Source of the DNA: Ostrea edulis
Lineage: Eukaryota
DNA length: 64,000 nt
Assembly (NCBI RefSeq): GCF_947568905.1
Contig: NC_079166.1
Location: 36,704,001 to 36,768,000, forward strand
Reading direction: 5' to 3'
Position 1 is the stretch's first letter. Each line of letters opens with the position of its first letter. The translations under genes were made by a program, and so were the position numbers. Shown one piece after another: positions 1-64,000 of this stretch. Under the pieces are notes generated by a model. The model saw nothing but the letters and a program-made list of their open reading frames with translations. It had not been told where the DNA came from and did no database searches.

Positions 1-599
1 GAATTTGCCTCAAATCCAAATCCGTTCATACTGACCATGAACAGCTCAAAAGTGATGTTCATTTCTTAAATGTTTGTTAGTATGCTAAATCCACAAATTA
101 CGAGTCATTCTGACATACTTAAGAATGTAATATGGTTTAGTAAATCGCTTCACATATATTCACTTGCAGTTGACACAGACTTTTGTGATGATATTTATAG
201 GATGATAGCGCAATGTTTGGATTGTTCAGCCTAAATTGGAGGAGGCCTTCATTCTCCGGATATTCTTGTTGAACGCATGGGTAAAATTCTCGAAGTGTCC
301 CGATAGGGTACCCTCTTTTTGATCGGATGGTTTGCGATCAATTCAAGGCCGTGGTTGATTGACTGTTTAACATCCCTTTCATAATCTTACGCTCCTATAC
401 AGACATCAACTGCTTTAGATAAAGTGCCACAAATTTTAAGTTGTACTAGACAGTGAGGATTCTTTATCGTATTTTAGCACATAACGATTGGTCCTTTGCT
501 AAGCGTCGGGCTTGCGTGTGTGCGTGAATTAATTATGTCCTATAGCACCGTTTCGTTCGACCATCTGCATCATATAGTTTTAAGACAAAACAAGATATT

Positions 600-745
600 T
601 GAAAGGTGAAGTTAACGAACATTGATCAATCTCATAACTCTTACAAGCAATACAAAATAGATAGTTGAACAAACACAGACCCCTGGAGACACCAGAGGTG
701 GGATCAGGTGCCTAGAAGGAGTAAGCATCCCCTGTCGACCGGTTT
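600..745 (-). mobile_element. Penelope-like element terminal fragment (dispersed repeat) in paralog D intron 7
   Basis: GAAAGGTGAAG..AACGAAC..TGATCAATCTCATAACTC...CACCAGAGGTGGGATCAGGTGCCTAG. This is the reverse complement of the 3' end of the RT fragment at 6130-7225; further copies at 1656, 16472, 33667 and 39365. Confidence 0.75.
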
Positions 746-801
746 GAAGGATCTATAAATCTAAAAGAAATATGTTCCGGGGATAATCTTTTACAATTTA
801 C

Positions 802-2854
802 CTAGATCAACTTGCAACCATGAGCTTTTATCGACGCCTGTCCAGTAACCCCCATAGTTCTGTCTACCGTTGTAAGCATAAGAGTTGCCATTTGATTTGT
901 GAGCGGTCATCTGTGCGTCAGGAATCCATCTTTTACTTTGTATAACGCCGAGACTGTTACTTCTACAATCTAAAGTAAAACACCACTAACTGCACAGCTT
1001 ATACTTAATGAAGTAAAACGCCACCGACTGCAGCTTATATTTATTTTAAAAATAAAACACCTCTGAGTGCACAGCTTATATTTAAGAATGTGATTTTCGG
1101 ATTGGTCGAAAACATACTCAGACTTTCAGTTGAAATGAAAATATTAGGATTTGTCGTACCTCCCTTCAAATGAGCAGAATTCGACAAATCTGAGATCAAA
1201 CATTATCCTACCTAGGTTACACGTTCTTCCGCCGTACGGGTGCGCGCAATGACATGTGTAACTTCCCCTTATTTCCTCACAGCGTCCTTCATGGATGCAG
1301 GGATTGGAGTCGCATTTGTTAGCACCTGTTGAAACGCATAAAAGCCAGTACAGTGCAATATATTGTCTTGACGCATTCTGTTTCAGTAAACAACATCGTA
1401 TTTACCCCGAATTAACATCTTAAACACGTTGTCAGCATGTTTCCCATGTTCGTCAAAGGCCCGTATGGTAAAGGTGTATAGCTCCTCTGTATTTGGGGCC
1501 AGCCCCTTCAGGGTACCCCTCACTGAGTCCAGTTTGATTCCTGGTGGCAGCTCTCCGCTAACCAGGTAGTATGTTAGTTTTGTTCCTTCGGGATCCTAAA
1601 TTATATACCGTATTAATTATTTGCAAGCATCACATGTAATGGCATATGCTTAGATGAAAGGTGAAAGTAACAGTGATCAATCAAGCAATACAAAATAGAT
1701 AGTTGGACAAACATGGACCCCTGGACACACCAGAGGTGAGATCAGGTGCCTAGGAGGAAACATCCCTTGTCGACCGATCACACCCACCGTGATCCCTATA
1801 TCTTGAACAGGTAAATGGAATTATCCGTAGTCAAAATCAGTATGCCAGGAACGGTCTAACAAACGGTATGAAACACGTCAGACAGCATTTGACCCAATGA
1901 TAGGTTGTATACTCGTACAATTCAAGAGGTCTTTCGTCCATACCAAGATTTTTGCACCAAGTTGTTTGGTCTCTCTTTTTTATACGCCCGTCTTTATATA
2001 TACCTAAGAGAGGTCAGACTTCTTTTACATCGGTCCCCTCTGTTGTTATAGTATAAAAGAAAGATAACTTCCCAATGCCAGGCTTCCGAAGGCGAGTGCA
2101 TGAACTTTATTGCAGGAAAGTATTTTAGTTCTGTTGATTATATGATCAGTGAAACATAACAACGCAAGTTCTCGTTGAACTTGTAAAATCGATGAAATAC
2201 TCACTGATGCTCTCAATTGAATATTGACTTTTTGACCGCTGTGGAATTCCCCCACATAGCCGAAAGGAGAGTGGTCCTCCCACACTGGCGGGAGGCTGAC
2301 GATAAGCTGTGAAGAAAAACCAGGAAAGGTGTTGCGATATTTTCTTTTGAGGTGGTAGTTGTTCAAAAAGGCACATCATCAATAACAAGTAATGACAATA
2401 TAATCATATTGATTTTATGGAATTTCTAAGAAAACATTTTACATAAATTATATTTTTGTCATACCTGTATCAGATAGAAAAGGTCTTCTCCGTCAAAATA
2501 CACACTTCCGGTTTTATTTGCCCCTGGTGCAATTCTAATGTTTCCATTGTAGCCAGACTAAATTGTACAAAGCGAAAGCATATATTTATATACAATGTGT
2601 GGTTATTCTGTCAGACAGATTTAGTAAACATTATACCAGAAGTGTGAGGTTTCCGTCCTGTTCCGCAATAACGTCAACATGTGGTCGGTGTATATTCAGG
2701 GCGCTGTAAGAATAGTGGGAAGTAGACATCAAAAAGAAGCATTTCTTAACGCTTAACAATTACTGCTGATCATACGGTGAATGACTTACTCGAATGGAGT
2801 AGACGCCGATGCAACGGTCAGCAACGTCCACCACACTGTCAAAGTCCAGAACAT
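802..2854 (-). CDS. Paralog D (3'-partial): secreted cubilin-N-like / Ig-like (He_PIG) / EGF / F5/8 type C protein
   Basis: Exons 2854-2790, 2703-2637, 2557-2465, 2306-2205, 1595-1406, 1325-1212, 969-802 (65, 67, 93, 102, 190, 114, 168 nt). All are GT-AG and phase-compatible. Translation: MFWTLTVWWTLLTVASA...RPHVDVIAEQDGNLTLLSGYNGNIRIAPG...SLPPVWEDHS...DPEGTKLTYYLVSGELPPGIKLD...KCDSNPCIHEGRCE...IPDAQMTAH...SSWLQVDL. Exons 8-9 were not found and are presumably left of base 1. Confidence 0.9.
975..1085. repeat. Three degenerate ~38-nt tandem units next to the paralog D exon 7 acceptor
   Basis: TAAAACACCACTAACTGCACAGCTTATA-like unit seen three times. Confidence 0.55.
1656..1915 (-). mobile_element. 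Penelope-like element terminal fragment in paralog D intron 4
   Basis: Same family as 600-745, extended by GTAAATGGAATTATCCGTAGTCAAAATCAG...CAGCATTTGACCCAATGATAGGTTG. Confidence 0.75.
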
Positions 2855-3238
2855 GACTCAAGTCTCAAGAACTACGCTTTTAAGAATTTAGTCAACCTAG
2901 AACACACACATAAGCAAGATCACTCCTCTCTTAAAACTAATGAAAATAAATAAAACACCGAAACAACAAGCCTTCTGTTCAGTGTTCTTTTCGTATTATT
3001 ACTTGATAGAAACAATAAACGGAAATGCGCACAGAAGTTTAGATGTTACCGGAAAAGTAATTTCATACCTTATGTAGAAATCATCACCTTTCGTTTGTTT
3101 GAGGAAATCTCTAGATACGATTGCAATCTTTGGTAGTTAGAAAACTGTATGAGATTAATATCCGTATCAGATAGAGGCCTCCTGGGTCTCTGCAAAGCAT
3201 TAAAGTCAGATGGTGACGTGCAAAAGGGAAGCGCCAAA
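2855..3238. promoter_or_regulatory. Putative bidirectional promoter of the D/A pair
   Basis: Only 384 bp lie between the divergent ATGs (2854 minus, 3239 plus). The promoter role is inferred from geometry; no TSS data. Confidence 0.6.
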
Positions 3239-5867
3239 ATGTCCAGGCTACTCATCCTCGTATTTTCTGTTTTTATTTTAACGAAATTTGATATTTGTAC
3301 TGCAAGGTAAATTTTTTAAACTTTTCTATATATTATACATTTTATGAAAGGTAATTTTAATCGTTAATGTGACCACACAATTAATTCTGATAAGGACTGA
3401 CTTTATATCAACTGTGGGTTTAACTGAACGACATTTTTTCCAGTTTCTTTGACATCCAATACCCCGATGTCTTCTTTACGGCTGAACAAGGTGGAAATGT
3501 TACGATCAGGGTAAAATACTATCAGAACAACCTTAGAGAATTTGTGAATTACACAGTTTTACAGTCTTTTGTAATTCAATACACCAAAACTAATGCTTTT
3601 TAATGGTAGTTTATATTTCTTGATGTTTTTCTGTATTAGGCTGGGCCAAATGGGGGCGACATTATCATGATTCCACAAGGCAATGGCACGGTTTTCATTG
3701 GCCAGACGGATATGCTTAAACTTTTTCAGGTAAGATCCTTGTCCCAGTATCAAATTGAATTGTGGGATATCGTCCTCATTGTGCTTTTTAATATCGGTTG
3801 AAAACAGCTTTGATAACTTCCTTATTTCTTCCCTTCGCTATTTCATCCTGTAGATTGTCAATAGTCTTCCACCTGTTTGGAGTGAAAAGTCACCGCATGG
3901 AACCCTGGGAACCTTTCTAGGAGGGAAATCAGTGTCTCTCAGTGTTTCTGCTCAGGTATGTCACATATTACCTGGAAATTAAGTAGAAAAATAAGTAAAA
4001 TGTTTTGGAAGGAAAAAATTTAACTCCGATTTATATATCAAATAGGATCCTGAAAATGGAAAAGTTACATACGAAAAGGTATCTGGAGCACTGCCACCTG
4101 GTATTCATTTGGACAAAAATACAGGGGCGATAACTGGACGCATTCCTGACGTTGATGCAACTTACGAATTTGGAATTCGAGTTACAGATAGTCATGGAAA
4201 ATATGCAGATCAAATCTTTTCCATTGATACAAGAGGTTCTCGCATATTGTTAATGTTTGGTTTTTTTTATTAGCGCAACATGATTTGGTGCAATAAGTAT
4301 TTTTGAAGATTTTAAAATAATTCATCTATGCATTTTCGATTTTATATTGTTTCTTTCTCCTTTAAGTGAGTAGTACGATCAAACCGTTACTCTGTAATAT
4401 ACGAGTAATTTTCCATTTTGGTTAAACTTTTTAAAAAAAAATGTTATTAACTGTTTTCATATACAGTGCATATACCTGATATATTAATTTTGTGTGTGTA
4501 ATTGTAGAGAGAGACCAGTGTTTGAGCACACCCTGTTTACATGGGGGAACTTGCAGTGACGATATAGATGATTTTGTATGCGCATGTGCAAAACCTTACG
4601 GTGGAAAAACGTGCAATATAAGTAATATCTGTCTTAGTGTTATTTTGCGATCTACCAAAAATTACTACATCAACATTTTTGTAGAAACTGTCTTTTTCTT
4701 TAGATTGTGGCTCTATGCCTGTTGGAATAGATCTGAACAACAAGAAAATTCCGGACGCACAGATGTCTTGTCACTACTGTTATGGTGACAGTGCTGGAAT
4801 TGACGGTCGGCTTCACGCCCCACAAGGCTGGGTGGGCCAAAATACAAACTCGTGGCTACAGGTAGTGTTTAACATATTTACTGTAGCAATGTCATTTTTT
4901 GTGTGTTGCTTATAGTCAAATGGTTAGAACATCTGGTTAGCAAACTCGTGACTTCGATACAGGCTTTTTTAACACAAATTGAAACTCCTATTAATAGGTC
5001 CTATATTCAGATTTAGCCCTGCAGTTGTACTCCTATTAAGAGGTCATATATTCAGATTTAGCCCTGCAGTGGTACTCCTATTAATATGTTCTATATTCGG
5101 ATTTAGTCCTGCAGTTGTACCCCTATTAAGAGGCCCTATATTCAGATTTAGCCCTGCAGTTGTACTCCTATTACGAGGTCCTATATTCAGATTTAGCCCT
5201 GCAGTTGTACCCCTATTAAGAGGCCCTATATTCAGATTTAGCCCTGCAGTTGTACGTTTGTAGGTTGACCTGGGGAAGGAAATGGAGCTTCATGCTGTAG
5301 CAAACCAAGGCTATACATCATCCAGTTACTACATCCTGACCTACACAATCAAATACAGCGTGGACGGAAACCAGTTCTATGACGTCAAGAACGGAACGAC
5401 CGTCATGGTAAATATTATCTAAGGAATCGTTTTATTTTCTGGGAGTTCGTTTATTGTGGGCAACCCCATTACTGCGAATTTTAAAAAGTTTCATCGAAAA
5501 GCACAATTTACACAATATTTTAATGTGTAGAGAACATCCATAAAAAAAACCAACATGCCAACCAAATCTTGGCAATCCAGGTGAATTGACCCTCCCCAAT
5601 TTAAATAATTCCACTGTATATTACTTTCGTCATATTCCTGAATACAGTTATTATGTTAAAGGATTTGTAAAAACAAATGTGAATGATTCATTTCAGTAAT
5701 GTGTACAAACATTTTACTTTCAGGATTTTAGTGGAAGCAGTAACGTGAACTCCGTAGTAAAACACACATTCCTGACACCGTTTAGAGCACGATTTGTTAA
5801 ATTCATACCGAAGACCTTTCACAGCAAACCCGGGATGAGAGTGGAACTGTACGGATGTGATGTTTAG
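3239..5867 (+). CDS. Paralog A: secreted cubilin-N-like / Ig-like / EGF / F5/8 type C protein, 358 aa
   Basis: Exons 3239-3306, 3444-3510, 3640-3729, 3854-3955, 4046-4235, 4508-4621, 4704-4861, 5264-5407, 5724-5867 total 1077 nt with an open frame. Translation: MSRLLILVFSVFILTKFDICTA...AGPNGGDIIMIPQGNGTVFIGQTDMLKLFQ...SGALPPGIHLDKNTGAITG...QCLSTPCLHGGTC...WLQVDLG...PGMRVELYGCDV*. AATAAA follows at 5883. Confidence 0.93.
4984..5255. repeat. 45-nt minisatellite, about 6 copies, in paralog A intron 7
   Basis: Unit CTATTAAGAGGTCCTATATTCAGATTTAGCCCTGCAGTTGTACTC. It accounts for ORF 4979-5263. Confidence 0.9.
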
Positions 5868-6129
5868 ATCTGAATTGCATCCAATAAAAATATGTAGTCA
5901 TCTTGTCTTCATTTACTTATAGGTCTCATGACTAACTCATTACAATGCGTTTCTGCCCGTTGTCATGCGATATCTGCCGTTTGTAAACTTTGAACTTTTT
6001 TTCAATTCTCTTCTTACACCATTCGACCAGTTTTGGTCACGGGAATGAAAATTGTAAATTTTGTTTTTTACCACAACCTCAAAGGTGAGATAAATACCTG
6101 TTTTATTTATTAACAATGTTCAATTGCAT

Positions 6130-7225
6130 CCATATGTTGATTCGATACATCCCAGTGAACTCAAAATAAAAGACATCAGTCTTCCATATTTGCTTCATAT
6201 TTGTATATTTTATTGAATATGAATCTTAACGGCAAACTGAAAACTCAACTTTATGACAAACGACAATGACAAATCAGCTTCTCCATCGTCAAATTCCCAT
6301 ACTGATTCCACCCACAAGTACTCTGAAGTTGAAATTAAAAATATGCTGGAGTTCCTCATTGACAATATGTTCGTAGTCTTTGGTGATCAGGTCTTCCAAC
6401 ATTCTGTTGGAATTCCCATGGACACGAACTGTGCTCCTTTGGTTTTTGATCTGTTTATATATTCTTATGAGGCAGAATTTATTCAAAAGCTTTTACATGA
6501 GAAGAAAAAATCTCTTGCAGTGGCCTTCATCTAGACATGTAGATATATCGAAGACATTTTATTTATTAACAATAATCATTTGCATTCATATGTCGATTCG
6601 ATATATCCCAGTGAAGTCGAAATAAGAAGACACCACAGAGTCCTCCACATCTTCTTCGTACTTAGATATTTCATTGAAAATAGTTATTAATGACAATCTA
6701 AAAACACAAATTATAACAAACGGGATGATTTCAGCTTCTCCATCGTCAACTTCCCATATTTATGTAGCAATATTCCATAATCACCTGCATATGGTGTTTA
6801 TATATCTCAATTCATTCGATGCACAAGAGCTTGTTCTGCGTATGATCAGTTTTTAAATCGAGAAAGACTGCTTACAATCACGTTGATATTACAGAGTTTC
6901 AACAGTCTCTTTCAGCAGTCAGCATTTTGCAAATTCTATGGTCGTTATAACGATCTAGTTTGCCCATACAACCTTTTATTTGGTCAAATGCTTTCTGATA
7001 TGTTTCATACGAATTTTTAGGCCGTTCTTTACACACTAATTCTCTGTTTATCTGATCGAGATTTAGGGCTCACGGCGGGTGTGACTGTTCGACAGGGGAT
7101 GCTTACTCCTTCTAGGCACTTGATCCCACCTCTGGTATATCCAGGGGTCCGTATTTGCCCAGCTTTACTTTGTATTACTTATAAGAGTTATGAGATTGAT
7201 CACTGTTCGTTATCTTCACCTTTTC
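6130..7225 (+). mobile_element. Degenerate Penelope-like retroelement reverse transcriptase fragment plus 3' terminal sequence
   Basis: Translation includes MLEFLIDNMFVVFGDQVFQHSVGIPMDTNCAPLVFDLFIYSYEAEFIQKL, then RYIEDIL, then DDFSFSIVNFPYLCSNIP and AYGVYISQ. These are RT motifs typical of PLEs. Stops and frameshifts are present. Confidence 0.85.
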
Positions 7226-7269
7226 GTGTACCAATTTTCCATGACCTGTATATGACGTTTATGTCTCTC

Positions 7270-7660
7270 GATTGATTCGATAGGCTAGAGAATGTTTTGC
7301 GTATGATCAATTTTTAAATCAATGCGAGTTACTGACAAAAAGTTTATATTATATGGGTTTTAACAATTTTGTATGAAATAAACATTTCACAAATTCTATG
7401 GTCGTTATAATGATCTTATTTGCAAAGGTAGGTCGAATGCCGTCTGACATGTTTCATACATGTACCAATTGTTCGGCCGTTCTCAAAATAGAGGGCATAT
7501 GGCAAGTGTGGTCCGTCAATAGGGAATTCTTACTCCTCCAAGGCACCTGATTCCACCTTTGTTGAGTTTATGGATCTGTCTTTGCCCTACTCTCAATTTG
7601 CTATTCTTTACAGGATGAATGAAATTAATCACTGATTGCTCCACTTTCAAAATCAATCTT
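7270..7660 (+). mobile_element. Second, more decayed Penelope-like fragment
   Basis: Repeats the AAATTCTATGGTCGTTATAA..GATCT and TACTCCTCC.AGGCACCTGAT motifs of 6950-7220. Confidence 0.65.
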
Positions 7661-8799
7661 TTAACACATTTTCCTCCTTTCTCTTGAACTTGAAGCAGAC
7701 AAACCGGGTTTACAGTTACAATGAGCTGGGACACATCTATTAATAATGTCTAAAGTTTCTTGCTCAGTGTTTGAGGCCCCAGGGTGGGTGTTCAATAGGT
7801 CATAGAGTAAAATCTATTATTTCAACCTTTCAATCTGCTTCGCTCAGAAACATCTTGCAGAAAAAATTGGGTGCTTAGTTAATTTATAATAGGCATAAAG
7901 TTTCCTACTAAAATTGTGAAATCTATGACCCAAGGGTGTGGGATCCAGGTACATGGTGGTGCATAGGTTATATACACTATCAACAAATCGTTGAAATTGT
8001 TCTTCACTCCTGGATATTCATCAGACAAATGGTAGCATAATTATAAAGTCTTTTAAAGACTTTTAATGAAATTGTAAAACTTCAATAACCCTTGGTCTGG
8101 TGTATAGGCTTTGGGACATAACTTTACAGAATTTATGTAATAAACCTGTAAAAACCTCCCTCACTCCCACAATTCTAGCCGACAAATTTGATAAATGGTT
8201 ATCTTGAGCTTATAGCCCTCTTCCAGTAGTAAGGAGCTCATATCCCCATGTTTAACCATAGTACCTTGTTTGAGGTTCTGTTGTATTTCGGATGAATATT
8301 TCTATATGATCCTAAGCAAGCGTTGTTGATTTTTTTTTTTCAGATAACAAATGTCATTCTTTTTTTTTTTTTACGAGATTTATGAATTAGCTTCATGATA
8401 TAACCACCGAAATTGATTCACAAAACTATTGTGGTGTAAATTGGCAAACATAGAACACCTACGATATTGTAGGTGTAGTACACCATTACACGTAACATAG
8501 TTAGACCTAATATCACTTGATCTACCGCAAGAGAACCGCAAGCTTAAAAGCTTCTTCACAAGATATCGGCAATTATCCCGCCAAAATGAGGGGTGAATTT
8601 TGCTACTGTCATGAAGTGAGTTTTTGATCAAATTATGAAACCAGGACAATTGATTCTTGCATAGAGGTTTTAAGAGCCTTTGGTCAACGTTATTGCAAAT
8701 GTGACAGATTCATTTTTCTACATAAAAATAATAATGCAATTTTTTTTCTTTACAAGTTTTAATTATTAAAAGAAAATCCCACAATTGTTATTTCAAGAG

Positions 8800-11695
8800 T
8801 TAAAGAATTTTTGTTTGTCGCTGGTAATGACATCCATATAGGTCTACCTTCAGTTGCGGTTTGTTGTGATATGAAGTAGGATGAAATCGAACAAATCGCG
8901 CATCAACAGGAACCGGAAGTGAATACTTGTAATTCCCAGTGGATGCATGAAAGGCCTAGGAGAAAATCATCAGATTATAACCAAATATTTGTTACAATCT
9001 GTTACAATCGTATAATAATTATTCGAAATGATTTGTAAAGACATGATTTCGAAATTTCCTTTTAGCTGATGAAACCTCTGTCTTGAACTAAAATGTAAGT
9101 TAAATTCGTGCTTACATGTTTTCCTCCATTTGTGTTGTTAACGGAGAGGAATGTGGTGCCATCTACGCTAACAGAAAGGGTGTATGCGGTACTGTAGTAC
9201 GAAGAACTGTAACCCTGGTTCCGTACAGCGTACACTTTGGTCAGGTTACCTTATAACACAAAGGAATACATCGGTAAATACCCATTACAAACAACGTAAG
9301 CACCAACACTTTCAAGAAACTCTTTGAATTCTCTAACTCCATATTACATTTCTATATCTGCTGAAACATCGTATAATAAATTTGTTATATATGAAGACAT
9401 TACCTAAATCTACCTGTAACCACGAGTTGCTGTTAGATCCCACCCATCCATATCCAGAAGCACCATATCGTCCATTAGATTCCAAGTAGGTACTGTACGT
9501 AAGGTATCCGGACATTTGCGCATCTGGTATCTTGTTTCTATCATTTACCCCCAAACTCTGGGACACACAAGCTGACATAAACGAAGATCTATGTGATTTA
9601 ATACGCGATTAACAATCAAGGTCTGATAGGAGTAATAGAAAATATAAATGGAGAGTTTTACGCAACTTCGCATTTCAATGTTTACATGTAACAGTTATCA
9701 AGACACAGGGATAGACATTAACTTTTCTTCTTTCTTGCCCTTCGGGCAAGTAAACTCGAAGTTTTACTTGTCCGAATGAAAAACTTAGTTGTCCGAAATA
9801 TTTTAGGCTCTGATAAGCCTGTCAACCAGTAACTCTAATTATCTTAATTATCTTTCTCTGTCAATGGTGGTACAGTACGATCTACTAGAATGGGCCTTCG
9901 CTATAATCTAACGATTTGGTAAAAAAAAAAAAAAAAAAAAACCAGTAAGATATGGAGTTGGACTGTACGTTCTAATATTTGATATTCATCAAGTTTAACA
10001 CAATTATTATAATAATCACATTTCCTATTTAAATAATCACTTGCCCCATCGGGCAAGTGTGTATCGAGTTTTACTTGTCTGAACTGGGTTTTCACTTGCC
10101 TCGGGCAATCGGACAACCGTTAATGTCGATCCCTGAGGCATCATTTAGTTTTGTTTTATTATATCATTCCATTTAAAACTGATAATGAAAAAACTTTCAA
10201 TTATCATGCCGAATCCCTATAGCAAATCCGTAATTAGGTAGCACAAATATAGAAATACTCACAAAATTCACATCTTGGACCTCCATATCCGGTTCGGCAT
10301 GTGCAGTTGAACCAACCTTTTGTATCTGTACACGTTCCACCGTGTAAGCAAGGGTTTGTTTCACAGTGATCTTTCACTACACAATCAACACAGAAATCAA
10401 TGCTAAAATTTATTATCACAAATAAATAAATAAATAAATAAATGATGATATGTTTCATGCGGATTTATTTTTATTTTTTTCAATTTCCATTGCAAGTTAT
10501 TCAAAAGGATATACCAATAGTTTCCATTTTGAAAAGAGCGTCAGCATATTTGTTGTGTTCATCGATGGCCCGAATGGTAAACTTGAAAATGTCTTCTACA
10601 TCCGGTATAATGCCTGTAATATGACCCGTGACGTTGTTCAGGGTCACGCCTTCCGGTAGTTCTCCAGAAACAACCATGAAATGGAGATTCGTACCTTCAG
10701 GATCCTAGTTTTAAATTAAAATGGCTGTATCGCAGCAAGTTCATATTCTACTGTTATGTTACAGTGTGCAAAATCGTAGTCGTTAAACTTACCTCGGCAT
10801 CAAGTTTGATGTTGATTCTCTGCTCGCCAATAAATGTTCCAAAGAAACCCATGTGCGCATGCTTTGACCAAATCGGAGGCATGCTTTTTGCCACCTGTGA
10901 ATGTGTACAATGTTACTGTATACGTTTATACAAATTTACCATTGTGGCATTACGAACGACTTGTAGATCAGCAATACCTCTATGATTTTCAGAATGTCGT
11001 CGTTCTCAAACATCACGGATCCGCCCGGTCCTGGTTTGAGGTATACATCTTTCAGGTCGTAACCAGACTGTAAAAATAATAAAGACAAACAAATATGTAC
11101 TTGATTTTGATTTCATGATTGGATTTTATGTTCAAGTATGTTTAAGAACGAGTTTGAAGTGTTTTTGTCAACTTTTAACTTCAAAGATCGCAATAAAGTG
11201 TTATCGTCACCATTTTGAATAAATCAGATGTTACATGTAACTTAATTGATGTGTAAACTAAATCTATCTATAGATTTTGTAATATGTCATAATTATTGAG
11301 TTGTTTGGTTGTTTGTTTTTTTTTAATTTATTTATTGGGGGGGGGGGGGGGGGGGGTCATCGGCACGTATGCTAAATCTTCGAAATGTCACATACACCAC
11401 TAAGATGAAGAGGAGATCATTTTCTTACCTGTAGAATAATGTCGCCATCAGCCGGTGCGTGCACGGAGAGACTAGGATATTGTATATCCAGAACACTGCA
11501 TAAGAAGAGGAGCTTTTTAATATCATAGTTTACATCAGAATTCTTTACAGGTAAATGTATATCATCAGTTTTCATTTTTAAGAATCCCAGACTTTTGAAT
11601 TAAAATTGAATTGAATATTGATAAGAAAATACCCACCCATCGTCACAGCGAATACTAGCTATGAAAAGTACAACAGGAAAGAGCCTGGCCACCAT
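8800..11695 (-). CDS. Paralog C: secreted cubilin-N-like / Ig-like / EGF / F5/8 type C protein, 359 aa
   Basis: Exons 11695-11637, 11495-11429, 11067-10978, 10894-10793, 10704-10515, 10376-10263, 9571-9404, 9249-9116, 8955-8800 total 1080 nt with an open frame. Translation: MVARLFPVVLFIASIRC...DIQYPSLSVHAPADGDIILQSGYDLKDVYLKPGPGGSVMFENDDILKIIE...HCETNPCLHGGTC...WLQVDLGNLTKVYAVRNQG...ARFVRFHP...LKVDLYGC...*. Confidence 0.92.
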
Positions 11696-11944
11696 TTTAA
11701 TGGCCTTGTGAAGACGTTTCCGACAAGGTCACAGCTCCAAAACGAGGGCGTAAAATAAAACTTCTGAGTTACTAGATACTGAAACATGGGGTCAGAGAGA
11801 TTACTGCTAAAATAATTAATAACATAAATAGACTGATTAATTATTTGGTAAACACACGAATTTAAAAATCGTCAAGGAAGAGCTTATGTACTAGGGCACC
11901 TTTTAATTTCGTCGTTTTTCTCTTCACTGACCCGTATATGCAGG
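11696..11944. promoter_or_regulatory. Putative bidirectional promoter of the C/B pair
   Basis: Only 249 bp lie between the divergent ATGs (11695 minus, 11945 plus). Inferred from geometry. Confidence 0.6.
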
Positions 11945-14900
11945 ATGCAGAATTTCATATATTCAATTTTTGTTTTACCTGGAATTGTTTATGGAAGGTA
12001 AAGAGTATGATGATAACAAATTGTATATTTTTTTTATATTATAGCAGGAATTGTCGTTCTGTTAAAACAAATGTTGTGACGCAGATTTCAGAACCTATTG
12101 TCTATTGTGAACAACTATACATTAATTGAAAGCGAAATGTATTTTTAAAACTGATGAACTTCTTTTCTTAAAGCTGTAAAAATGTTACAGAATTCCATTT
12201 AATGACTCATATTCCCGTTGTATTTTCCAGTTTCTTCCAGATTGATTATCCCAATGTGAATGTCTCTGCTGAACCCGGTGGAGACCTCACGTTCGAGGTT
12301 AGTATAGTCTCGTTCCAAAAGGGTATTTTCCTCTGCATGCTCTCTAGCCTTGTTCAATTAACTGATCTAACATGATCACAAAAATAGCTGTTAAAGCATT
12401 GAACATCCATGGATATCTAATTTGTTTTTGTATGTGAATTTATGTCAGTTGCGTTATATTGCTAACAGGCTGGTGTAGGTGGTGATGTTATTTTGAAACC
12501 AGGAGCTGGAGGCACCGTAATTATTGCAGGAACGGATCTCAGAAAATTTATAGAGGTGATTTTGTAAACAGTTCTGTCCATATTCTATAATTGATAGTTT
12601 TATGTAAGGCTTGCCTAAATAGATATATTAGCCACGACTTCGAATTTCAAACTTGTAATACAAAATCAAAATTTTCAGAAAGTGAAGAGTCTTCCGCCCA
12701 TATGGACGAAACAGTCGGTTCACGGGTCACTGGGAGCGTTTACTTCCGGTACAAAATTGGCCGTGTCGGTAGAAGCAATGGTAAATATGTTTTACATTTC
12801 TATATCTTCTTGGTGGTAGGTGACAGTTTCAGCCAGTTGAAGCACGCCTCTATAAAAAGCGCCATTTTAATATGTAAATGATGTTGAAATTCCCTCGGCC
12901 AAATTGTCAGACGGTGTTTTCTTGAATATATAGTACTATGAACGATTTCGATTCTTAAAGAGGTTCGCACCTGACATTTGAAGTAATGTCAATTTTTTTG
13001 GGAAGTGTATCTTTGATTTCTACATTGAAGAAGAATTAGGAAATTAAAAAGAAAAACTGGGGTCGCAATGCTTGTTATTGAGCTATAGTGATATAAATAT
13101 GACCTTATTGCACTTAAAACTTATTCAACTAAACTTGATTTTTCTGTTAGTGTCAACACAACATAAGCAACACAAATCAATCATTACATAAAATAGATAC
13201 ACAATCATGTCCTCTAACACTACAGATGAAAAAATAAATTAATACTAGTAAAGGAAATAAATAATGACCCTTTTGCACTTGATATACGCAAAACTTCATG
13301 ATATCAAAATTGAGAGTTTAAAAAGACATATTAGGAGTAATGTCAATTTCTAAAATTTTACATAATTTTCAAGGTCTGGTCTTCCAATTTAAAATGCAAC
13401 TAAAAAAAAGTGGGGGTTGGAGATCAAAGTTTTTGGCGAAAATACTGAATTTTTATACAAAATTTCGAATGAATTAATTAAAACTTTTTTAAGAATCGGT
13501 GTACTGTTTGGAAAAATATATCAACCAAGTTAATAAATTACAACATTTGAACTAGTTCCAAGTCTCAACTACCTGTATCATAAATTATAAAACTGAAATA
13601 CACATATAGGGATATAAAAATAGACGATACATTGGATTAAACAGAAACTGTAATATCGTGCAGAATTAGAACTTTTTGATTAGTGAATCCTTCGCCCCAA
13701 AATATAGTCCCTGTCAAACACTTTCAATTTGAATTGACACAAAAAAAAAATTCAGCTGGATAAGGTTCAGCAATAGATGTGTAATATATTTGCACCAATA
13801 GGATCAGTTTTGAACCAGTGAATACTTAGTTGTAGCATCCTGCGCAGTTGTATTCAAAAGCTCAGGAGCTAACTTCCTTAATCAAAAATGTCTCGAAATT
13901 GCGAGATTGGTAAAGAGCGGGTTTTGTTTTTTTATCAGCAAATGATGCAATGTTTTGGGGGGAAATGTATAATTTTCGTCGATTTCGTGGAATCTACATA
14001 CATGTACCTATGAGTTCAGGTTACGCCAAGTCAAACTGACTTGACTCAATTCCTTCTCTCCTCCCGGAGATTAGGGCTTCAACGTGCATCTTCCAATATG
14101 GAGAGTTGGGGTTTTGTTTTTACCACGAAGTGACATGATTGTTTATTGAAGCAAAAATGTGATAATTGAAAAAGAAAGTAAAAGTTGACTACTTTCAAAT
14201 CATTTTATTTTTTTCAAAATCATTTAATGTTTTCTATCAAAAATCATGTCTGGCATGATCTCTATTTATGTATACTCAAAAAGGGTTCATGCATTATAAC
14301 TTTGTTGAAGTATCTAGTAAAACTGTTTTATTTCTTTTTGACTTTGTTGAAGTATCTAGTAAAACTGTTCTATTTCTTTTTAACTTTGTTGAAATATCTA
14401 GTAAAACTGTTTTATTTCTTTTTGACTTTGTTGAAGTATCTAGTAAAACTGTTCTATTTCTTTTTAACTTTGTTGAAATATCTAGTAAAATCGTTTTATT
14501 TCTTTTTAACTTTGTTGAAGTATCTAGTAAAACTGTTCTATTTCTTTTTAACTTTGTTGAAATATCTAGTAAAATCGTTTTATTTCTTTTTAACTTTGTT
14601 GAAGTATCTAGTAAAACCGTTCTATTTCTTTTTAACGTTGTCCCTATTCTCCTCAAACAGATTATATAGAGCTAGTATCAGATATAGCCATGGGGTTGAT
14701 GTACATGTATTTATATTCTTTGCGACAAGAATGAATTTGGATATTCAATATTTCATAGTGATTAAAGATTTGAATTGCACATTGATCTATAGCAATGCAT
14801 ATGTCGGTTTGACTTTGGTGAAACCTTAACATCCTACATAAAATGCTAAAAGAATTAGAATATTCTCCATAAACACATTTTGACTATCTTCTCATCCACG

Positions 14901-16496
14901 AACCAGCTTTTCTTTCTCTCTCTCAAAGACCCCACGAAATTGTATGTCTGTATCGGTGAGGAAAACATACAAGATTCAGTGTTTTATCCACTACAGGACC
15001 CAGATGGTGGTAACATACAGTATAGGGTAATTTCCGGTCATCTACCACCCGGAACATCTCTGAACTCTTCCACTGGAGTCATCACCGGTACAGCCCCCGA
15101 TATAGACGCAACATATACATTCGGAATTCGCGCTACTGACCGCCATGGAAAATATGCTGATGGGACGTTCTCTATTGATATAAGAGGTTTCAAATGATTC
15201 TTAATATTTTACTTTACGTTTAAAACTAACCTTTTGTGGAATAACATTGAAACTTTTCAAACAATACAGAGCAATTTCGATGATTTCATACTCGCCTATT
15301 TAAATGCCTATATAACAACGCAAAATGTACCAACGACACAAAATGTAATAATTTTACGTTCTTACATTGTGCGTCGAGTTTAAGACAGAATGCAATTACA
15401 CAAAATGTGATATTAATTCTCTTTAATTTAATTAACAATATCAGGATCTTTATATATGACCGCAATTATTACATTTGATGTGTCATTATATTTTGTGTCG
15501 ATTTCAACGCAACATGTAATTAACACAATTTATTTTTATCTAATTTCTTTTTTAAATAATGAATACTATGTACAGAAATTAAGACAATTATATCGTAAAT
15601 TCAATAAGAGAACAATTATCTGATTCATTTAAAGCACGCATTAATTCAAACTTAAAGATATCATTAATTGATTATATTTTCCATTACTTGAGTTTATAAT
15701 ACATTGGTATATTTATAACATTTTGCGTTATTACATTCTGTACATTGAACTCGATGGAAAATGCAATAAGTCAAAAAGTAATATTGAGTTTATTATATTT
15801 TTCGTTATTACATTTTGCGTTGCTACATTCCTATTTATGTAGCACATGACGTGGATTGATTGATTGTATATTGTTTAACGTCCCTCTCGGGAATATTTCA
15901 CTCATATGGAGACGTACACATGACGTAGATAAACATATAGTAACGTATTATGTAGAACGAGATCAGTGTAGCAGCAACCCTTGTCAAAATGGCGGCACAT
16001 GTTCGGATGATTTTGGAAGGTACGACTGCGCATGCTCAACTGACTATGGAGGACAACACTGTGAGCTACGTATGTATTCACTTTATCTCTCAGCAAAATT
16101 GTCTGTATAATCTGTACAAGTATGATTACTGGAGACTCGCTTTCTTAACCAGGATGCGACTCAAACCCCTTTGGAGTTGACAACGCGAAAAAGACAATCC
16201 CAGACGCCCAAATGTCCGCACACTACACGTTTTCTAATCATTTTGCCTCCAATGGTCGATTGCATAGTCGTGACGGTTGGATCGGAGAGGCTTCCAACTC
16301 ATGGCTTCAGGTTTATGTCAAATTTGCTTAGATGTTTGCTTTAACTATGTACACCATTCCTAATTAGTCTAGTGTCAGTATCCTAAAGTTAGAATCAGTC
16401 TAGGTGGTAACTTGAATTTAAATGCAAAATAATCAATATATCAATTTTATTTTCAATTAATCGTCTTTATATGAAAGGTGAAGATAACGAACAGTG

Positions 16497-16548
<52 letters not shown>

Positions 16549-17081
16549 TATAACATGTAAAACAAATCTGTTATTTGTTTGGTGTAGGTTGACCTGGGAG
16601 AGACACGGGTTGTTCACTCAGTCGCTACACAGGGTTATCGGTCTTCCACCTACTACACACTGTCGTACAAACTTCAATATAGCACAGACGGAAACAACTT
16701 CCACGACGTCATCGGGAGTAACGGATCCCCAAAGGTACACTCACTCTGCATGTAAATTCAATTTACAGAGTCATCAACCTATGTGACTACAAATGCGAAA
16801 TGGTGTTAACGCTGCTGTTGTTTCACCTCAAGCTTTTAAAATTCGCCATGAGAATTGGCCTTGATAGTCTAAGGGTGTACTTCTGTCGCGTCGAGTTCAT
16901 CTGCAGTCGCGTTTCAGCGCTTTCATGTCTATTTTAGGAATTCTTTGGAAGCAGCGCTTACGACTCGGTGATTAAACACTACCTTCCCAACAGAATCAGT
17001 GCAAGGTTCATCCGGTTTGTTCCGCTAACATGGCACAATGGTGGGAAACCAGGTCTTCGTGTGGAAGTGTATGGATGTTGA
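11945..17081 (+). CDS. Paralog B: secreted cubilin-N-like / Ig-like / EGF / F5/8 type C protein, 353 aa
   Basis: Exons 11945-11997, 12231-12297, 12469-12555, 12679-12780, 14997-15186, 15956-16069, 16153-16310, 16588-16734, 16938-17081 total 1062 nt with an open frame. Translation: MQNFIYSIFVLPGIVYGS...AEPGGDLTFEAGVGGDVILKPGAGGTVIIAGTDLRKFIE...DPDGGNIQYRVISGHLPPGTSLNSSTGVITGT...QCSSNPCQNGGTC...PGLRVEVYGC*. Confidence 0.93.
12880..13900 (+). mobile_element. ~1-kb non-autonomous dispersed repeat; second copy inverted at about 43215-44150
   Basis: AAAAACTGGGGTCGCAATGCTTGTTATTGAGCTA (about 13034) and TACTTAGTTGTAGCATCCTGCGC..AAAAGCTCAGGAGCTAACTTCCTT (about 13823) recur as reverse complements near 43995-44045 and 43212-43265. 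Boundaries are approximate. Confidence 0.7.
14293..14637. repeat. 42-nt minisatellite, about 8 copies, in paralog B intron 4
   Basis: Unit AACTTTGTTGAAGTATCTAGTAAAACTGTTCTATTTCTTTTT. It accounts for ORFs 14185-14829, 14268-14669 and 14294-14656. Confidence 0.92.
15311..15827. mobile_element. MITE-like element with ~19-bp terminal inverted repeats
   Basis: Left TATAACAACGCAAAATGTA; right TACATTTTGCGTTGCTACA. Internal sub-repeats of the same motif. No clear TSD. Confidence 0.6.
15855..15914 (-). mobile_element. SINE-like family 3' tail fragment
   Basis: GATTGATTGATTG...AACGTCCCTCTCGGGAATATTTCACTCATATGGAGACGT matches the end of the full copies at 24593 and 25549. Confidence 0.7.
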
Positions 17082-17235
17082 CCAGAAACGCAATCCGAAC
17101 CTTACGTTCTCAATAGCTCCGCAGAAGGATATCTTTGGTTTTTTTTGGACTTTCCATTCCTCATAAAATCAATTGTAATTATCGTCATATCTTCATACGT
17201 ATCTTAAAACAGAGATAACATTTAATTTTATGCCA

Positions 17236-20200
17236 TTACTTTGCTTTTAGTTGCGGTAGACAAAAATTATAAAAGGAATGATCCATAAATGAGTCTAGTG
17301 GTCGCCAAGACACCATGCCGTCGTCACAGAGTTCTTGTAATGACGTCACATTCCCAAAGTAATGAGGATCCTGAAATATATATATACAAATCATAGCCAG
17401 TGCTGCGATAGAAATTTTGGTCAATTAGAATTCCTGTGTACAGAATTATAATGCAAAAAGACCCTCATTAAAAGAGAGAAGAAAGAATGGAGCCACGTGA
17501 ATCATGTGGAATTCATACAAATGGTCGGGCTGTATGGCTAACAAAATCAATGGAGATGCTATGATAGAAATTATTTGTTTAATTATCATTCCCTGAAATC
17601 AATTAAAATCATCTCCCATTCGAACACAAGAAACGAAGTACAAAATGTAGTTGGGAATATACAGTAGTCGTGGGATAGCTGGTGATTGTGTAGTGCCTAC
17701 ATGAAATGAGTCGGCATCGGATTCGACATCTTAAGCTTAATAATTATGCTCAGTTTTAATGATATGGTCCACTTATTTATACATGCACATGTTTGGCGTC
17801 ACAATCATGTTTAATTTCCGTTATATTTCAATGCATTCGTTTGAACTTTCATTTCGAAAAAGAATTATAAAATTTACATAATCTGACTTCCGTTACCAAT
17901 ATTCATGAAGCATTGAAAAAACAATCTCATACGCACAACAATAAGCAGAGATTTCTTTTCCAGCGACACCCCTACAATCCCCTTAGAGGCATTGTCCGTA
18001 TCGCCGCCTGTAAAAGAAAAGTGATCAAAATCAATATCTATATCATGCCATAAGTTCATATCAGAATTTTCACAATGCTAAATTTGGTGAAATGCATCAT
18101 AACAAAAATCTTTTGATTAATCTGGATCTTGCTCGTTCACGTAAAAAAAGTATTACCCATCATGATGACCGAGCCAATCTCCCGGAAGTGCTTTTGGAAG
18201 TCAGGTAGATATTCTATCAGTTTGTCTCCCGACGTCACGTGAATTAGTCTGCACGGAACCTATATAATTAAGAGAACCTCAATGATAAGCTTTAAAAACA
18301 ACACATAAAATACATGTCTCCTTTTTGTGGTATATAAACATTAACAGTTGGCGCTGACGCATGTGCGTCAATTCACGATTAGGGAAAATAGGAAACAGAG
18401 AAACTAAGAATGTAGCAATTGATGATTCCGAATTGCTCTAAATAGTCTGATCTACGATTTCGCTAAATTCTGAATACACTAATTCAAAATATATATTGTA
18501 ATTTGAACATGTGACTTTTTCATCTTTAAACGTTACCTCATAAAAATAGTCGATACATATACATATTTCAAAGCTGCCTATCCAGTTTTTGGAACCAGCA
18601 AACGATTTCGGTTTGTCGTTCATAGCAACTAGGGCGTCTTGAATCTGTGTTAATGAAGGAACCTCGCGCATGCTCTCCCCTCGTTGCCCTTTGATCCATG
18701 AACACATCGTCTGAAGTGTCCGATATCCACATCCCCATCCCTGTAATAAATATAAATTCTACATGTAACACAGTTTGCCGTTATGAAATTGACAATAAAC
18801 CCATTGACGCCAAAAAAAAAACCCACCGTGTTGCGTCAATGAATTTATTGTAGATTTTATACCTTGATGTCGTCTGCAATGTCTTTATCTCTCCTAAAGG
18901 ATTGTATTATGTACAAGTTTTAAAACAGACTTAACCGTAGTAAGATAAAAATGACCTCGTTGTCGGTCTTGGGTTATAGTTGGGGCTCGGGACATAATAT
19001 CTAAACTGGGGATTATTCTCCATAAGTCACTATTTCTTAATTCTCACAATACCAACCAAAAAAACCCTAGAGCCATGCATGCTCATTCTGGAAAGTCATA
19101 GGGCCTACAACACAGGAAAGTCATAGGGCCTACAACACAGGAAAGTCATAGGGCCTACAACACAGGAAAATCATAGGGCCTACATAAAAACGTGACGTTC
19201 CCTCACAATATGGACATTTCCAATGACCTTGACATTTAACATTTATACTCTTGGAACTCATTTTTATGAATTGTAACATACTTGGAGGATCGCAAAAAAT
19301 ACCAATAATTGTTGTACAAAAAGGAAGAAATCTTGGTTTTTCGCTAAAGTAACTTTCAATTTGACCTTAAAAACTGTAAAATATACATTCTAGACAATAA
19401 TCTAGTATTATGGGGCAAGTAAAAAATCATTCATACTTAGAAATATACTTCGAAACTAATTCAAATGGGGGGGGTGGTGGGTGGTTCTGGGTAAACACCC
19501 ACTGAAATTTCGGACCAAAATTACACCTGCAGCTGTGTATCCATCATTTCAATGTGTTTATTTTATTCTTAATTACGTGTATTTCAAAATTTATTATTAT
19601 TATTAGATAAACAAGTATTTTATATCATTGTTACGCTTTTGAATTTGCATCATTTTAAGTACATTCATTATAAAGATTCAACTGAGCTGTTTCTAACAAC
19701 TGCGACAGATAAGTGTTGAGTTTTGTAAGTGCAAACGGTTTTACACTTTTATTTCTTAGTTTGCAACTCGTCATAAATATTGATAAAAAAAATGTGAGGA
19801 AAAAATGTTTCAAACTTTTGTATTCAGGAATCAACATCCACAAACCAATGTTACAAGTAAAAGGCCAAGGTCATTTTGAACGTTGTGATTTCATCGCTCG
19901 TTCTTTTCACAAGCATTGAGATTTCTCGCTCGTAATTCGCATGAGGGACTTTTTAACCCTGGATGGATTTCTACGTAGGAGAAAATAACTATTATGACGA
20001 CTTTATACATGGGAAAATTTAAGGCACCTTTTCCCCGGGTTAATTAACTTGTGCCTGATTTTCTTGGTCTTCTTTTCTCGGAGGGAAATAATACGTAATA
20101 TTTGCATCACAATTGGTGTAGGGTGATAATAATCAAAACTATAAAAACATCCATTCGGTTGCACTGAAATCACATCTAAGAAAAGGGGTTATGTCATACT

Positions 20201-53684: not shown

Positions 53685-53931
53685 CTGAGTAACTGATTGA
53701 TAAGAGGAAATGCGAGCCTGCTGGATTCACTGTGAAGGAAGAAGTGTAACTCTGAAATACTGTCATCTAATTAATTAACTAATCGTGTGTCCGTGTTAAA
53801 AGGTATACACAATTCTCTGAATTTAAATATTAACTGATCGTACACGTAACCACGTGTGTACAGGCACATATCAGTGTGATTGGCATTATCACGCGTGTAT
53901 CGTTAATTTAATCAACTGTGTGAACAAAGAC

Positions 53932-63768: not shown

Positions 63769-64000
63769 CAAGAATCGTCACAGTTCAGGCCCTCATGTAT
63801 TTTCAAAAATGAAGTTGAATCATTTCTTATATTTACTGTCTACTTTTATTTCTGTCAGAATTCCCAGCCATAGAAATAGAAGTACTATATTTATATCTGT
63901 AATCATACGCACGTTGTTTACAACTGTAGCACATTCATCAGGAAATGGCTATCATTACAATTTGTGAAGATATCAAATCAAAGGCAAAAACATTGGCAAT

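What the first reader, a model, noticed from the sequence alone, without database searches (positions are those of the whole stretch)
802..17081. Four-gene family of secreted proteins that may trimerise through a cubilin-type beta-helix and present discoidin heads
Seen: four paralogs share a 9-exon plan and the order signal peptide, ~50-aa beta-rich module, Ig-like domain, EGF, F5/8C. The module encoded by exons 2-3 follows P-x(5-8)-G-[ND]-[LIV]-x-[LFI]-x-[SA]-G-x(2-5)-[ND]-[IV]-x-[ILM]-x-P-x-x-x-G-[ST]-V-x-[FI]-x(3)-D-[LIM]-helix. An example is D: RPHVDVIAEQDGNLTLLSGYNGNIRIAPGANKTGSVYFDGEDLFYLIQ. Established: the cubilin N-terminus (recalled as [44 protein letters not shown]) has the same pattern and forms an intertwined three-chain beta-helix that docks on amnionless. 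EGF plus F5/8C is the lactadherin/MFG-E8 ligand-binding logic. Inference: these are short soluble trimers carrying three lipid- or glycan-binding heads, possibly an invertebrate opsonin, nutrient-capture or matrix system. I know of no description of this domain combination.
Basis: partly seen in the sequence, partly recalled or inferred. Interest (0 to 1): 0.88.

Follow-up and report, generated by a model that had tools for sequence, protein, structure and literature searches.

The report
Secreted discoidin proteins with cubilin-like N-terminus
Four neighbouring mollusc-type genes encode small secreted proteins (Ig-like, EGF and discoidin domains) that begin with a conserved 52-residue piece resembling, suggestively but not conclusively, the part of the vitamin-B12 receptor cubilin that locks three chains together.

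Summary
Four paralogous genes sit in alternating orientation at 802-17081. All introns are GT-AG. Three genes are complete, with 9 exons and 353-359 aa. The leftmost gene is cut by the window edge after exon 7.

Pfam confirms the order He_PIG (putative Ig), EGF, F5/8C. Exons 2-3 encode a 51-53-aa N-terminal module with no Pfam match. The module is under strong purifying selection. It is conserved in orthologues of all four paralogues found in other species' contigs.

Its literal regex fits none of 16 family sequences, because one spacer is off by one.

The similarity to cubilin residues 36-84 is real in pairwise tests:
- hhalign local gives P about 6e-5 and probability 62-66%.
- None of 600 column permutations reached the real score.
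- The family HMM scores 10 bits, against at most 7.3 bits in 0.59 M background residues.
- Four of six family-invariant residues are identical in cubilin.
- Both have three 10-11-residue strand units, sit at the mature N-terminus, and share exon phases.

The match is not database-significant: a PDB-wide search found no hit. Cubilin's long coiled coil is absent. Trimerisation could not be tested. The verdict is a plausible, unproven cubilin-type trimerisation module in a new architecture, of moderate interest.

The parts
802..2854 (-). Gene A, exons 1-7 only. Exons 8-9 lie beyond the window start. Exons: 2854-2790, 2703-2637, 2557-2465, 2306-2205, 1595-1406, 1325-1212, 969-802.
   Evidence: Hand model with all GT-AG introns. 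No exon 8 or 9 in 1-800.
3239..5867 (+). Gene B, complete, 358 aa, 9 exons: 3239-3306, 3444-3510, 3640-3729, 3854-3955, 4046-4235, 4508-4621, 4704-4861, 5264-5407, 5724-5867.
   Evidence: Pfam on single exons. An orthologue with the same exon order sits in L001.
8800..11695 (-). Gene C, complete, 359 aa, 9 exons: 11695-11637, 11495-11429, 11067-10978, 10894-10793, 10704-10515, 10376-10263, 9571-9404, 9249-9116, 8955-8800.
   Evidence: Orthologues in L015, L020 and L021.
11945..17081 (+). Gene D, complete, 353 aa, 9 exons: 11945-11997, 12231-12297, 12469-12555, 12679-12780, 14997-15186, 15956-16069, 16153-16310, 16588-16734, 16938-17081.
   Evidence: Orthologues in L019 and L020.
3444..3729 (+). 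N-terminal module of B (exon 2 at 3444-3510 and exon 3 at 3640-3729). It comprises an N-terminal strand, three G-[ND]-h-x-h strand units, and a short helix starting at D-[LIM].
   Evidence: No Pfam family. Alignment of 16 family sequences. AF2 secondary structure E9-12, E19-23, E28-32, E39-42, H47-50.
2465..2703 (-). N-terminal module of A (exons 2703-2637 and 2557-2465). This paralogue is the most cubilin-like.
   Evidence: Smith-Waterman score 49 against cubilin 41-84, z 8.0, 0 of 2000 shuffles.
10978..11495 (-). N-terminal module of C (exons 11495-11429 and 11067-10978).
12231..12555 (+). N-terminal module of D (exons 12231-12297 and 12469-12555).
3854..4235 (+). He_PIG (putative Ig, dystroglycan-type cadherin-like) domain of B, exons 4-5. 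Equivalents: A 2306-2205 and 1595-1406; C 10894-10793 and 10704-10515; D 12679-12780 and 14997-15186.
   Evidence: PF05345 E 6.1e-11 on exon 5, covering profile positions 34-94 of 96.
4508..4621 (+). EGF domain of B, exon 6. Equivalents: A 1325-1212, C 10376-10263, D 15956-16069. B and D fit the calcium-binding EGF signature.
   Evidence: PF00008 E 5.4e-9. EGF_CA pattern match in B and D only.
4704..5867 (+). F5/8 type C (discoidin) domain of B, exons 7-9. Equivalents: C 9571-8800, D 16153-17081, and A 969-802 (first third only).
   Evidence: PF00754 E 8.5e-7 on exon 8 and 5e-4 on exon 9.

Best explanation
The locus holds a four-member family of compact genes, arranged as two head-to-head pairs. 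Each encodes a secreted protein of about 355 aa.

Shown: each protein has a signal-like peptide, a conserved 51-53-aa N-terminal module, one He_PIG Ig-like domain, one EGF domain (calcium-binding type in B and D) and one C-terminal discoidin (F5/8C) domain.

Shown: the module is a selected domain in its own right. It has four beta-strand segments, three of which are 10-11-residue G-[ND]-h-x-h repeat units, followed by a short helix. In sequence pattern, position and exon phases it resembles the part of cubilin (residues 36-84) that forms a three-chain intertwined beta-helix.

Inferred: the module assembles three chains, homo- or hetero-typic among the paralogues, into a short beta-helical hub. 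The three discoidin heads then project from it and bind a lipid or glycan ligand multivalently. This is the same logic as other trimeric soluble recognition molecules.

Not decided by my data: whether the open end of such a helix is capped by the family's own longer N-terminal strand or by amnionless.
For: Gene structure and domains.

The genes are real and conserved:
- Orthologous exon fragments of all four paralogue groups occur in other assemblies.
- Loci L001-L021 carry the same exon order and the same head-to-head pairs.
- Module dN is 0.04-0.29 with saturated dS, and dN/dS is <=0.1 where it can be estimated.

Cubilin link:
- The recalled sequence was verified against 6GJE.
- Smith-Waterman z is 8.0, 4.7, 3.1 and 1.1 for A, D, C and B.
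- The family HMM scores 10.1-10.5 bits on cubilin, and 0 of 20,000 shuffles reach it. The best score in 593,677 residues of real beta-rich background is 7.3 bits.
- hhalign local gives probability 62-66% and P 5.7e-5 to 7.5e-5 over 36-37 columns at 35% identity. None of 600 column-permuted controls reached the real score of 23.5; their maximum was 17.1.
- The family-invariant residues P7, G17, G24 and G40 are identical in cubilin (P42, G49, G56, G69), and V42 aligns with I71.
- The global alignment starts at cubilin S36, the first residue of the N-terminal region as defined by Larsen et al., PMC6283879.
- Mammalian cubilin genomic ORFs show that this region is one exon. It starts in a split codon (phase 2) and ends in phase 0 at ...LHQ|GT. 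The family's exon 2 also starts in phase 2, and its exon 3 ends in phase 0 at ...[IF][QEK]|GT.
- Larsen et al. 2018 describe a three-turn intertwined helix, one strand per chain per turn, plus an N-terminal hairpin. The family also has three repeat units plus an N-terminal strand.
- MAFFT twice aligned unit 1 onto unit 2, which shows the internal repeat.
Against: - No cubilin hit at E<=10 when the module (single sequences or an exon-3 profile) was searched against all PDB sequences.
- hhalign global probability is only 8-20%.
- The cubilin profile I could build is mammals only (85-95% identical), so it adds little power.
- The family lacks cubilin's long trimeric coiled coil. Only about 8-10 helix-prone residues precede the He_PIG domain.
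- The exon end lies 5 residues (family) versus 6 (cubilin) after the shared [DE]D[LIM] motif.
- The family has an extra phase-0 intron inside the module.
- The family-invariant P34 is T65 in cubilin.
- The AF2 monomer model (pLDDT 72.9, pTM 0.44, imperfect alignment) gives an ordinary 4-stranded sheet plus a helix. Foldseek finds nothing below E 1.8 and no 6GJE.
- No expression, oligomer or ligand data exist.
Confidence: 0.5

Rival explanations
1. The module is a small monomeric beta-sheet domain, or an N-terminal extension that packs against the He_PIG domain. On this reading the likeness to cubilin is convergence of Gly/Asn-turn and alternating-hydrophobic strand patterns. The proteins act as monomeric secreted adhesion or matrix proteins of the EGF-discoidin kind.
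For: - The AF2 monomer gives a 4-stranded sheet plus a short helix at pLDDT 72.9 without needing partners.
- No coiled coil follows the module (sequence).
- There is no database-level hit to cubilin.
- hhalign global probability is 8-20%.
- The phmmer near-misses were other Gly-rich beta-repeat proteins, such as RTX, antifreeze and designed beta-trefoil proteins. This shows the pattern type is common.
Against: - The match to cubilin covers the whole strand region in register and includes 4 of 6 family-invariant residues.
- Nothing in 0.59 M residues of beta-rich real proteins comes near the cubilin score.
- The number of units, the N-terminal placement and the exon phases also coincide.
- A monomer AF2 run cannot produce an intertwined trimer, so its fold is not evidence of monomer state. 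The alignment given to it was partly misaligned.
Confidence: 0.35
2. The module is a true cubilin-type helix that, as in cubilin, needs amnionless to cap its open end. The four proteins would then be membrane-tethered 'mini-cubilins': alternative ligand-binding subunits of a cubam-like endocytic receptor, possibly as heterotrimers, rather than free soluble trimers.
For: - In cubilin the amnionless contact is residues 42-49, with Met44 at the hydrophobic centre, and uncapped helices are retained in the ER (PMC6283879).
- The family conserves the aligned P-x-[VLI] (invariant P7, V/L/I at position 9).
- Drosophila uses two cubilin paralogues in one amnionless-bound trimer (PMC8710305). That is a precedent for paralogue heterotrimers.
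Against: - The family has 3 extra residues and a different sequence between the Pro and the first GN unit, so the interface is not conserved in detail.
- No amnionless gene was examined, because none is in the window.
- There is no evidence of co-expression or binding.
- This reading depends on the cubilin homology, which is itself unproven.
Confidence: 0.12

Closest known systems
Cubilin N-terminal region (human CUBN residues 36-84; PDB 6GJE, Larsen et al. 2018, PMC6283879)
   Same: - It sits at the mature N-terminus of a secreted protein.
- It has an N-terminal strand with P-x-hydrophobic, then three 10-11-residue G/N-hydrophobic-x-hydrophobic strand units, then [DE]D[LIM] starting a helix.
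- An EGF domain lies further downstream.
- The coding exon starts in phase 2 and ends in phase 0.
- It shows 31-36% identity to the family profile over 36-48 columns.
   Different: - The family has no CUB domains, one EGF instead of eight, and no roughly 50-residue coiled coil.
- The He_PIG domain follows almost directly.
- There is an extra intron inside the module and 3 extra residues before the first unit.
- Statistical support for homology is only pairwise-level.
- Trimer formation and amnionless docking are untested.
Lactadherin/MFG-E8 and EDIL3/Del-1 (EGF repeats + F5/8C domains)
   Same: These are secreted proteins that combine an EGF domain with a C-terminal discoidin domain presumed to bind a ligand.
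   Different: - The family has a single discoidin domain rather than two.
- It has no RGD motif in any of the four proteins.
- It has an added He_PIG domain and N-terminal module.
- Sequence relation beyond the shared domain types was not tested.
Retinoschisin (RS1): N-terminal oligomerisation domain + one discoidin domain (from my own knowledge)
   Same: It is a small secreted protein in which a short N-terminal segment multimerises a single discoidin head for multivalent binding.
   Different: RS1 oligomerises through cysteines into octamers. The module here has no cysteine and an unrelated sequence.
Collectins, ficolins and C1q-type proteins (trimeric stalk + C-terminal recognition head; from my own knowledge)
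   Same: They share the proposed working logic: a trimerising N-terminal part presenting three recognition domains.
   Different: They have a different trimerising element (collagen or coiled coil) and different heads. There is no sequence relation.

Membership tests
Cubilin (CUBN orthologues) | Eight EGF repeats followed by 27 CUB domains | tested here: not met
   The proteins are 353-359 aa with one EGF, one He_PIG and one F5/8C domain. No CUB domain was detected.
Cubilin-N-type intertwined beta-helix module | Location at the mature N-terminus, with an N-terminal strand plus three strand units followed by a helix | tested here: met
   The 16-sequence alignment shows three G-[ND]-h-x-h units after a P-x-h strand. 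AF2 secondary structure gives 4 strands plus a helix. The global hhalign starts at cubilin S36.
Cubilin-N-type intertwined beta-helix module | Significant sequence or profile similarity to cubilin residues 36-84 | tested here: inconclusive
   hhalign local gives P 5.7e-5 to 7.5e-5 and probability 62-66%; global probability is 8-20%. The HMM scores 10 bits. There is no hit at E<=10 in PDB-wide searches.
Cubilin-N-type intertwined beta-helix module | Trimeric coiled coil directly after the beta-helix (cubilin about 76-131) | tested here: not met
   Only about 8-10 residues (for example DMLKLFQIVNS) separate the last strand from the He_PIG domain, which starts at LPPVW.
Cubilin-N-type intertwined beta-helix module | Three chains interlocked in one beta-helix | not testable with these tools
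   Only monomer AlphaFold2 is offered. Its model cannot represent an intertwined trimer, and Foldseek found no match to 6GJE.
Cubilin-N-type intertwined beta-helix module | Docking on amnionless beta-helix 1 | not testable with these tools
   No amnionless sequence of this species was available and no complex prediction tool is offered.
Lactadherin/EDIL3 family | EGF repeat(s) with an RGD motif followed by two tandem F5/8C domains | tested here: not met
   There is one F5/8C domain and no RGD in A-D.
He_PIG / dystroglycan-type cadherin-like Ig domain proteins | Pfam PF05345 match above the gathering score | tested here: met
   43.1 bits against a cut-off of 24, E 6.1e-11, on exon 5 of B. Database fragments of the orthologues carry precomputed PF05345.

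The most novel reading that the evidence does not exclude
The cubilin trimerising beta-helix may not be private to cubilin. It may be an ancient, portable module that bivalves have also attached to an Ig-EGF-discoidin cassette. The four paralogues would then form homo- or heterotrimers that dock on amnionless, giving a second family of ligand-binding subunits ('mini-cubilins') for a cubam-like endocytic receptor.
Probability: 0.12. Interest if true: 0.8.

Novelty: new variant of a known kind. Interest (0 to 1): 0.5.

Why it matters
The intertwined beta-helix of cubilin is described in the literature I could search only for cubilin itself. Neither that region nor this module has a Pfam family. 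If the module here is the same device, three things follow:
- The cubilin N-terminus becomes a reusable trimerisation domain with a recognisable sequence signature.
- It gives a 52-residue minimal version, without the coiled coil, for structural study.
- It points to a new class of trivalent discoidin-headed proteins in molluscs. These are candidate pattern-recognition, matrix or uptake molecules, possibly linked to amnionless.

If the likeness is convergent, the family is still an undescribed but ordinary lineage-specific domain combination.

Tried and rejected
It returned only giant multi-repeat proteins of unknown origin whose summed scores swamped the list. It was useless for finding family members.

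No full-length Pfam scan, homologue search, Atlas search or structure prediction was therefore run. Everything was done exon by exon or on peptides of <=57 aa.

3. PDB sequence searches with the B module, the A module and an exon-3 profile gave no cubilin hit.

4. Pfam gave nothing for either the module or cubilin 41-84.

5. align_proteins could not produce a correct whole-module alignment from exon references. Unit 1 kept aligning onto unit 2. The correct alignment exists only in my scripts.

6. The AF2 monomer plus Foldseek search was uninformative for the trimer question.

7. The cubilin fragment search returned mammals only, so no invertebrate cubilin profile could be built.

8. The metagenome scan found more genomic orthologues but no spliced transcript.

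9. Literature searches for the domain combination, for cubilin-like proteins in molluscs and for the run accessions found nothing relevant. The species remains unidentified.

10. One contig look-up failed.
Full report
**What is there**

Stop-to-stop reading frames and splice sites on both strands of 1-18000 give four paralogous genes in the order - + - +.

| Gene | Span | Strand | State | Length |
|---|---|---|---|---|
| A | 2854 down to 802 | - | exons 1-7 only | partial |
| B | 3239-5867 | + | complete | 358 aa |
| C | 11695 down to 8800 | - | complete | 359 aa |
| D | 11945-17081 | + | complete | 353 aa |

- Every intron is GT-AG.
- Exons 2-6 have near-identical lengths in all four genes: 67, 87-93, 102, 190 and 114 nt.
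- Exon 1 always ends two bases into a codon.
- Gene A is cut by the window.
- No further paralogue lies in 17-64 kb.
- The start codons of A/B and C/D are 384 and 249 bp apart, head to head. This agrees with another note of this scan.
- The last discoidin intron but one sits 10 nt further 3' in A and C than in B and D: exon 7 is 168 versus 158 nt and exon 8 is 134 versus 144 nt.

**Domains**

- Exon 5 matches He_PIG (PF05345) at E 6.1e-11, covering profile positions 34-94. Exon 4 therefore supplies the first third of that Ig-like domain.
- Exon 6 matches EGF at 5.4e-9.
- Exons 8 and 9 match F5_F8_type_C at 8.5e-7 and 5e-4.
- B and D fit the calcium-binding EGF signature; A and C do not. No protein has an RGD motif.
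- The paralogues are 41-52% identical overall.

**The N-terminal module**

Exons 2-3 encode 51-53 residues between the signal-like peptide and the He_PIG domain. Typed as a single peptide, the module has no Pfam family. Neither does cubilin 41-84, so the lack of a profile hit says nothing either way.

I obtained relatives by searching the protein collection with exon alignments and fetching the contigs.
- Exon-sized ORF fragments of all four paralogue groups occur in many other assemblies.
- Fifteen loci (L001-L021) carry the same exons in the same order.
- These loci include the same A/B and C/D head-to-head pairs.

A 16-sequence alignment of the module shows these features:
- Invariant P7, G17, G24, P34, G40 and V42.
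- A P-x-[VLI]-x-[VF] strand.
- Three units of the form G-[ND]-[LIV]-x-[LIF], 10-11 residues apart.
- A [DN]-[LIM]-x-x-[LIF]-[IF] helix start.

MAFFT twice aligned unit 1 onto unit 2, which shows that the units are an internal repeat. Between species, synonymous sites are saturated while module dN is only 0.04-0.29, with dN/dS <=0.1 where it can be estimated. The module is therefore a constrained domain, not a linker.

Its first spacer should be 9 residues, and gene A carries a two-residue insert. A corrected version fits all 16.

**Comparison with cubilin**

The recalled human sequence is exact. It equals residues 16-59 of chain 6gje_B, and I verified residues 1-100 of that chain the same way.

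Larsen et al. 2018 (PMC6283879) describe residues 36-135 as follows:
- an N-terminal hairpin whose residues 42-49, with Met44 at the centre, dock on amnionless;
- a long coiled coil after the helix.

Pairwise tests:
- Smith-Waterman scores of modules A, D, C and B against cubilin 41-84 are 49, 35, 29 and 23, with z of 8.0, 4.7, 3.1 and 1.1 against shuffles.
- The family HMM scores 10.1-10.5 bits on cubilin. None of 20,000 shuffles reaches this.
- The best score in 593,677 residues of real, mostly beta-rich background is 7.3 bits.
- hhalign of the family profile against cubilin gives probability 62-66% and P 5.7e-5 to 7.5e-5 in local mode. In global mode it gives probability 8-20% and P 2e-4 to 1e-3.
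- None of 600 column-permuted cubilin alignments reaches the real score of 23.5; their maximum is 17.1.

In the alignment, four of the six family-invariant residues are identical in cubilin (P42, G49, G56, G69). V42 aligns with I71, and only P34 differs (T65). The alternating hydrophobic positions of all three units match. The global alignment starts at cubilin S36, the first residue of the N-terminal region as the paper defines it.

An unplanned piece of evidence came from the cubilin fragment search. Mammalian genomic ORFs show that cubilin 42-84 is one exon. It begins in a split codon (phase 2) and ends in phase 0 right after ...LHQ, followed by GT. The family's exon 2 also begins in phase 2. 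Its exon 3 ends in phase 0 at the aligned [QEK], one residue closer to the shared [DE]D[LIM] motif.

**Limits of that evidence**

- PDB-wide sequence searches with the module found no cubilin at E<=10.
- Ten bits corresponds, by extrapolation from the background, to roughly a couple of chance hits per proteome.
- My cubilin profile is mammals only.
- Permutation controls destroy strand periodicity, so they cannot separate homology from convergence of beta-helix-like patterns.
- The family lacks the coiled coil that was long held to drive cubilin trimerisation.
- An AlphaFold2 monomer run on the B module used an alignment whose exon-2 rows were partly misaligned. It gave pLDDT 72.9 and pTM 0.44, with strands at 9-12, 19-23, 28-32 and 39-42 and a helix at 47-50.
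- Foldseek found nothing below E 1.8 and no 6GJE. A monomer model cannot show an intertwined trimer, so this neither supports nor refutes the idea. It does show that a monomeric sheet is a possible alternative.

**Reading**

I put about 0.5 on the module being a cubilin-type trimerising beta-helix, homologous or structurally equivalent. Such a helix would make trivalent discoidin-headed secreted proteins.

I put about 0.35 on a monomeric small beta domain with a convergent pattern.

Drosophila Cubn/Cubn2 heterotrimers (PMC8710305) are a precedent for paralogue mixing.

The ligand and physiological role (opsonin, matrix, uptake) are inference from domain types only.

**Novelty**

Literature searches found no description of this architecture or of a cubilin-N-like module outside cubilin. 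That is a weak negative, because the library is partial and I could not query annotated proteomes with full-length proteins. I rate the finding as a new variant of known kinds (EGF-discoidin secreted proteins; cubilin-type N-terminus) with moderate interest. The decisive tests are multimer prediction and solution oligomer state.

Noticed in passing
window 802-969 / 4704-4861 / 9404-9571 / 16153-16310 and the following exons: The intron after discoidin exon 7 lies 10 nt further 3' in genes A and C than in B and D. In A and C it follows VDLG (phase 1); in B and D it follows WLQ (phase 0). The C-type boundary is also seen in the orthologue L020 and the B-type boundary in L001, so the shift predates those species.
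   Followed up: partly
window 2854-3239 and 11695-11945: Both gene pairs are head to head, with only 384 bp and 249 bp between start codons. These are likely shared bidirectional promoters. The same A/B and C/D pairing is kept in other species' contigs (L002, L020).
   Followed up: partly
window 4984-5255; 14297-14641; 16500-16552; 972-1085: Tandem repeats lie inside introns: 45 bp x 6 (intron 7 of B), 42 bp x 8.2 (intron 4 of D), (AT)26 (intron 7 of D) and 38 bp x 2.9 (intron 6 of A).
   Followed up: no
window ~615-752 (-), 1680-1820 (-), 7081-7180 (+), 7523-7615 (+): A short dispersed repeat recurs in introns and intergenic DNA. One frame reads GMLTPSRHLIPPLV.PGV.VC..IYFVLL. It looks like a MITE or SINE-like element.
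   Followed up: no
window 6241-6860 (+): Open frames in the B-C intergenic region look like decayed mobile-element coding sequence (for example ...FLIDNMFVVFGDQVFQHSVGIPMDTNCAPLVFDLF...). They were not identified.
   Followed up: no
window 53854-55587 (+): An intronless 577-aa ORF has Cys/His-rich B-box-like motifs, a coiled-coil-like middle and a repeat-rich C-terminus. It looks like the TRIM/NHL-type genes that are expanded in bivalves. It was not scanned against Pfam.
   Followed up: no
window 21198-21977 and 62948-63967: Two long tandem-repeat arrays read as open frames on both strands: a 'HVYIRLFLESHCYT' unit and a 'LRECELWGFMLLY' unit. These are satellite-like DNA, not genes.
   Followed up: no
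L019:148-234: The D-type orthologue in this marine-metagenome contig uses a GC rather than GT donor after module exon 3.
   Followed up: no
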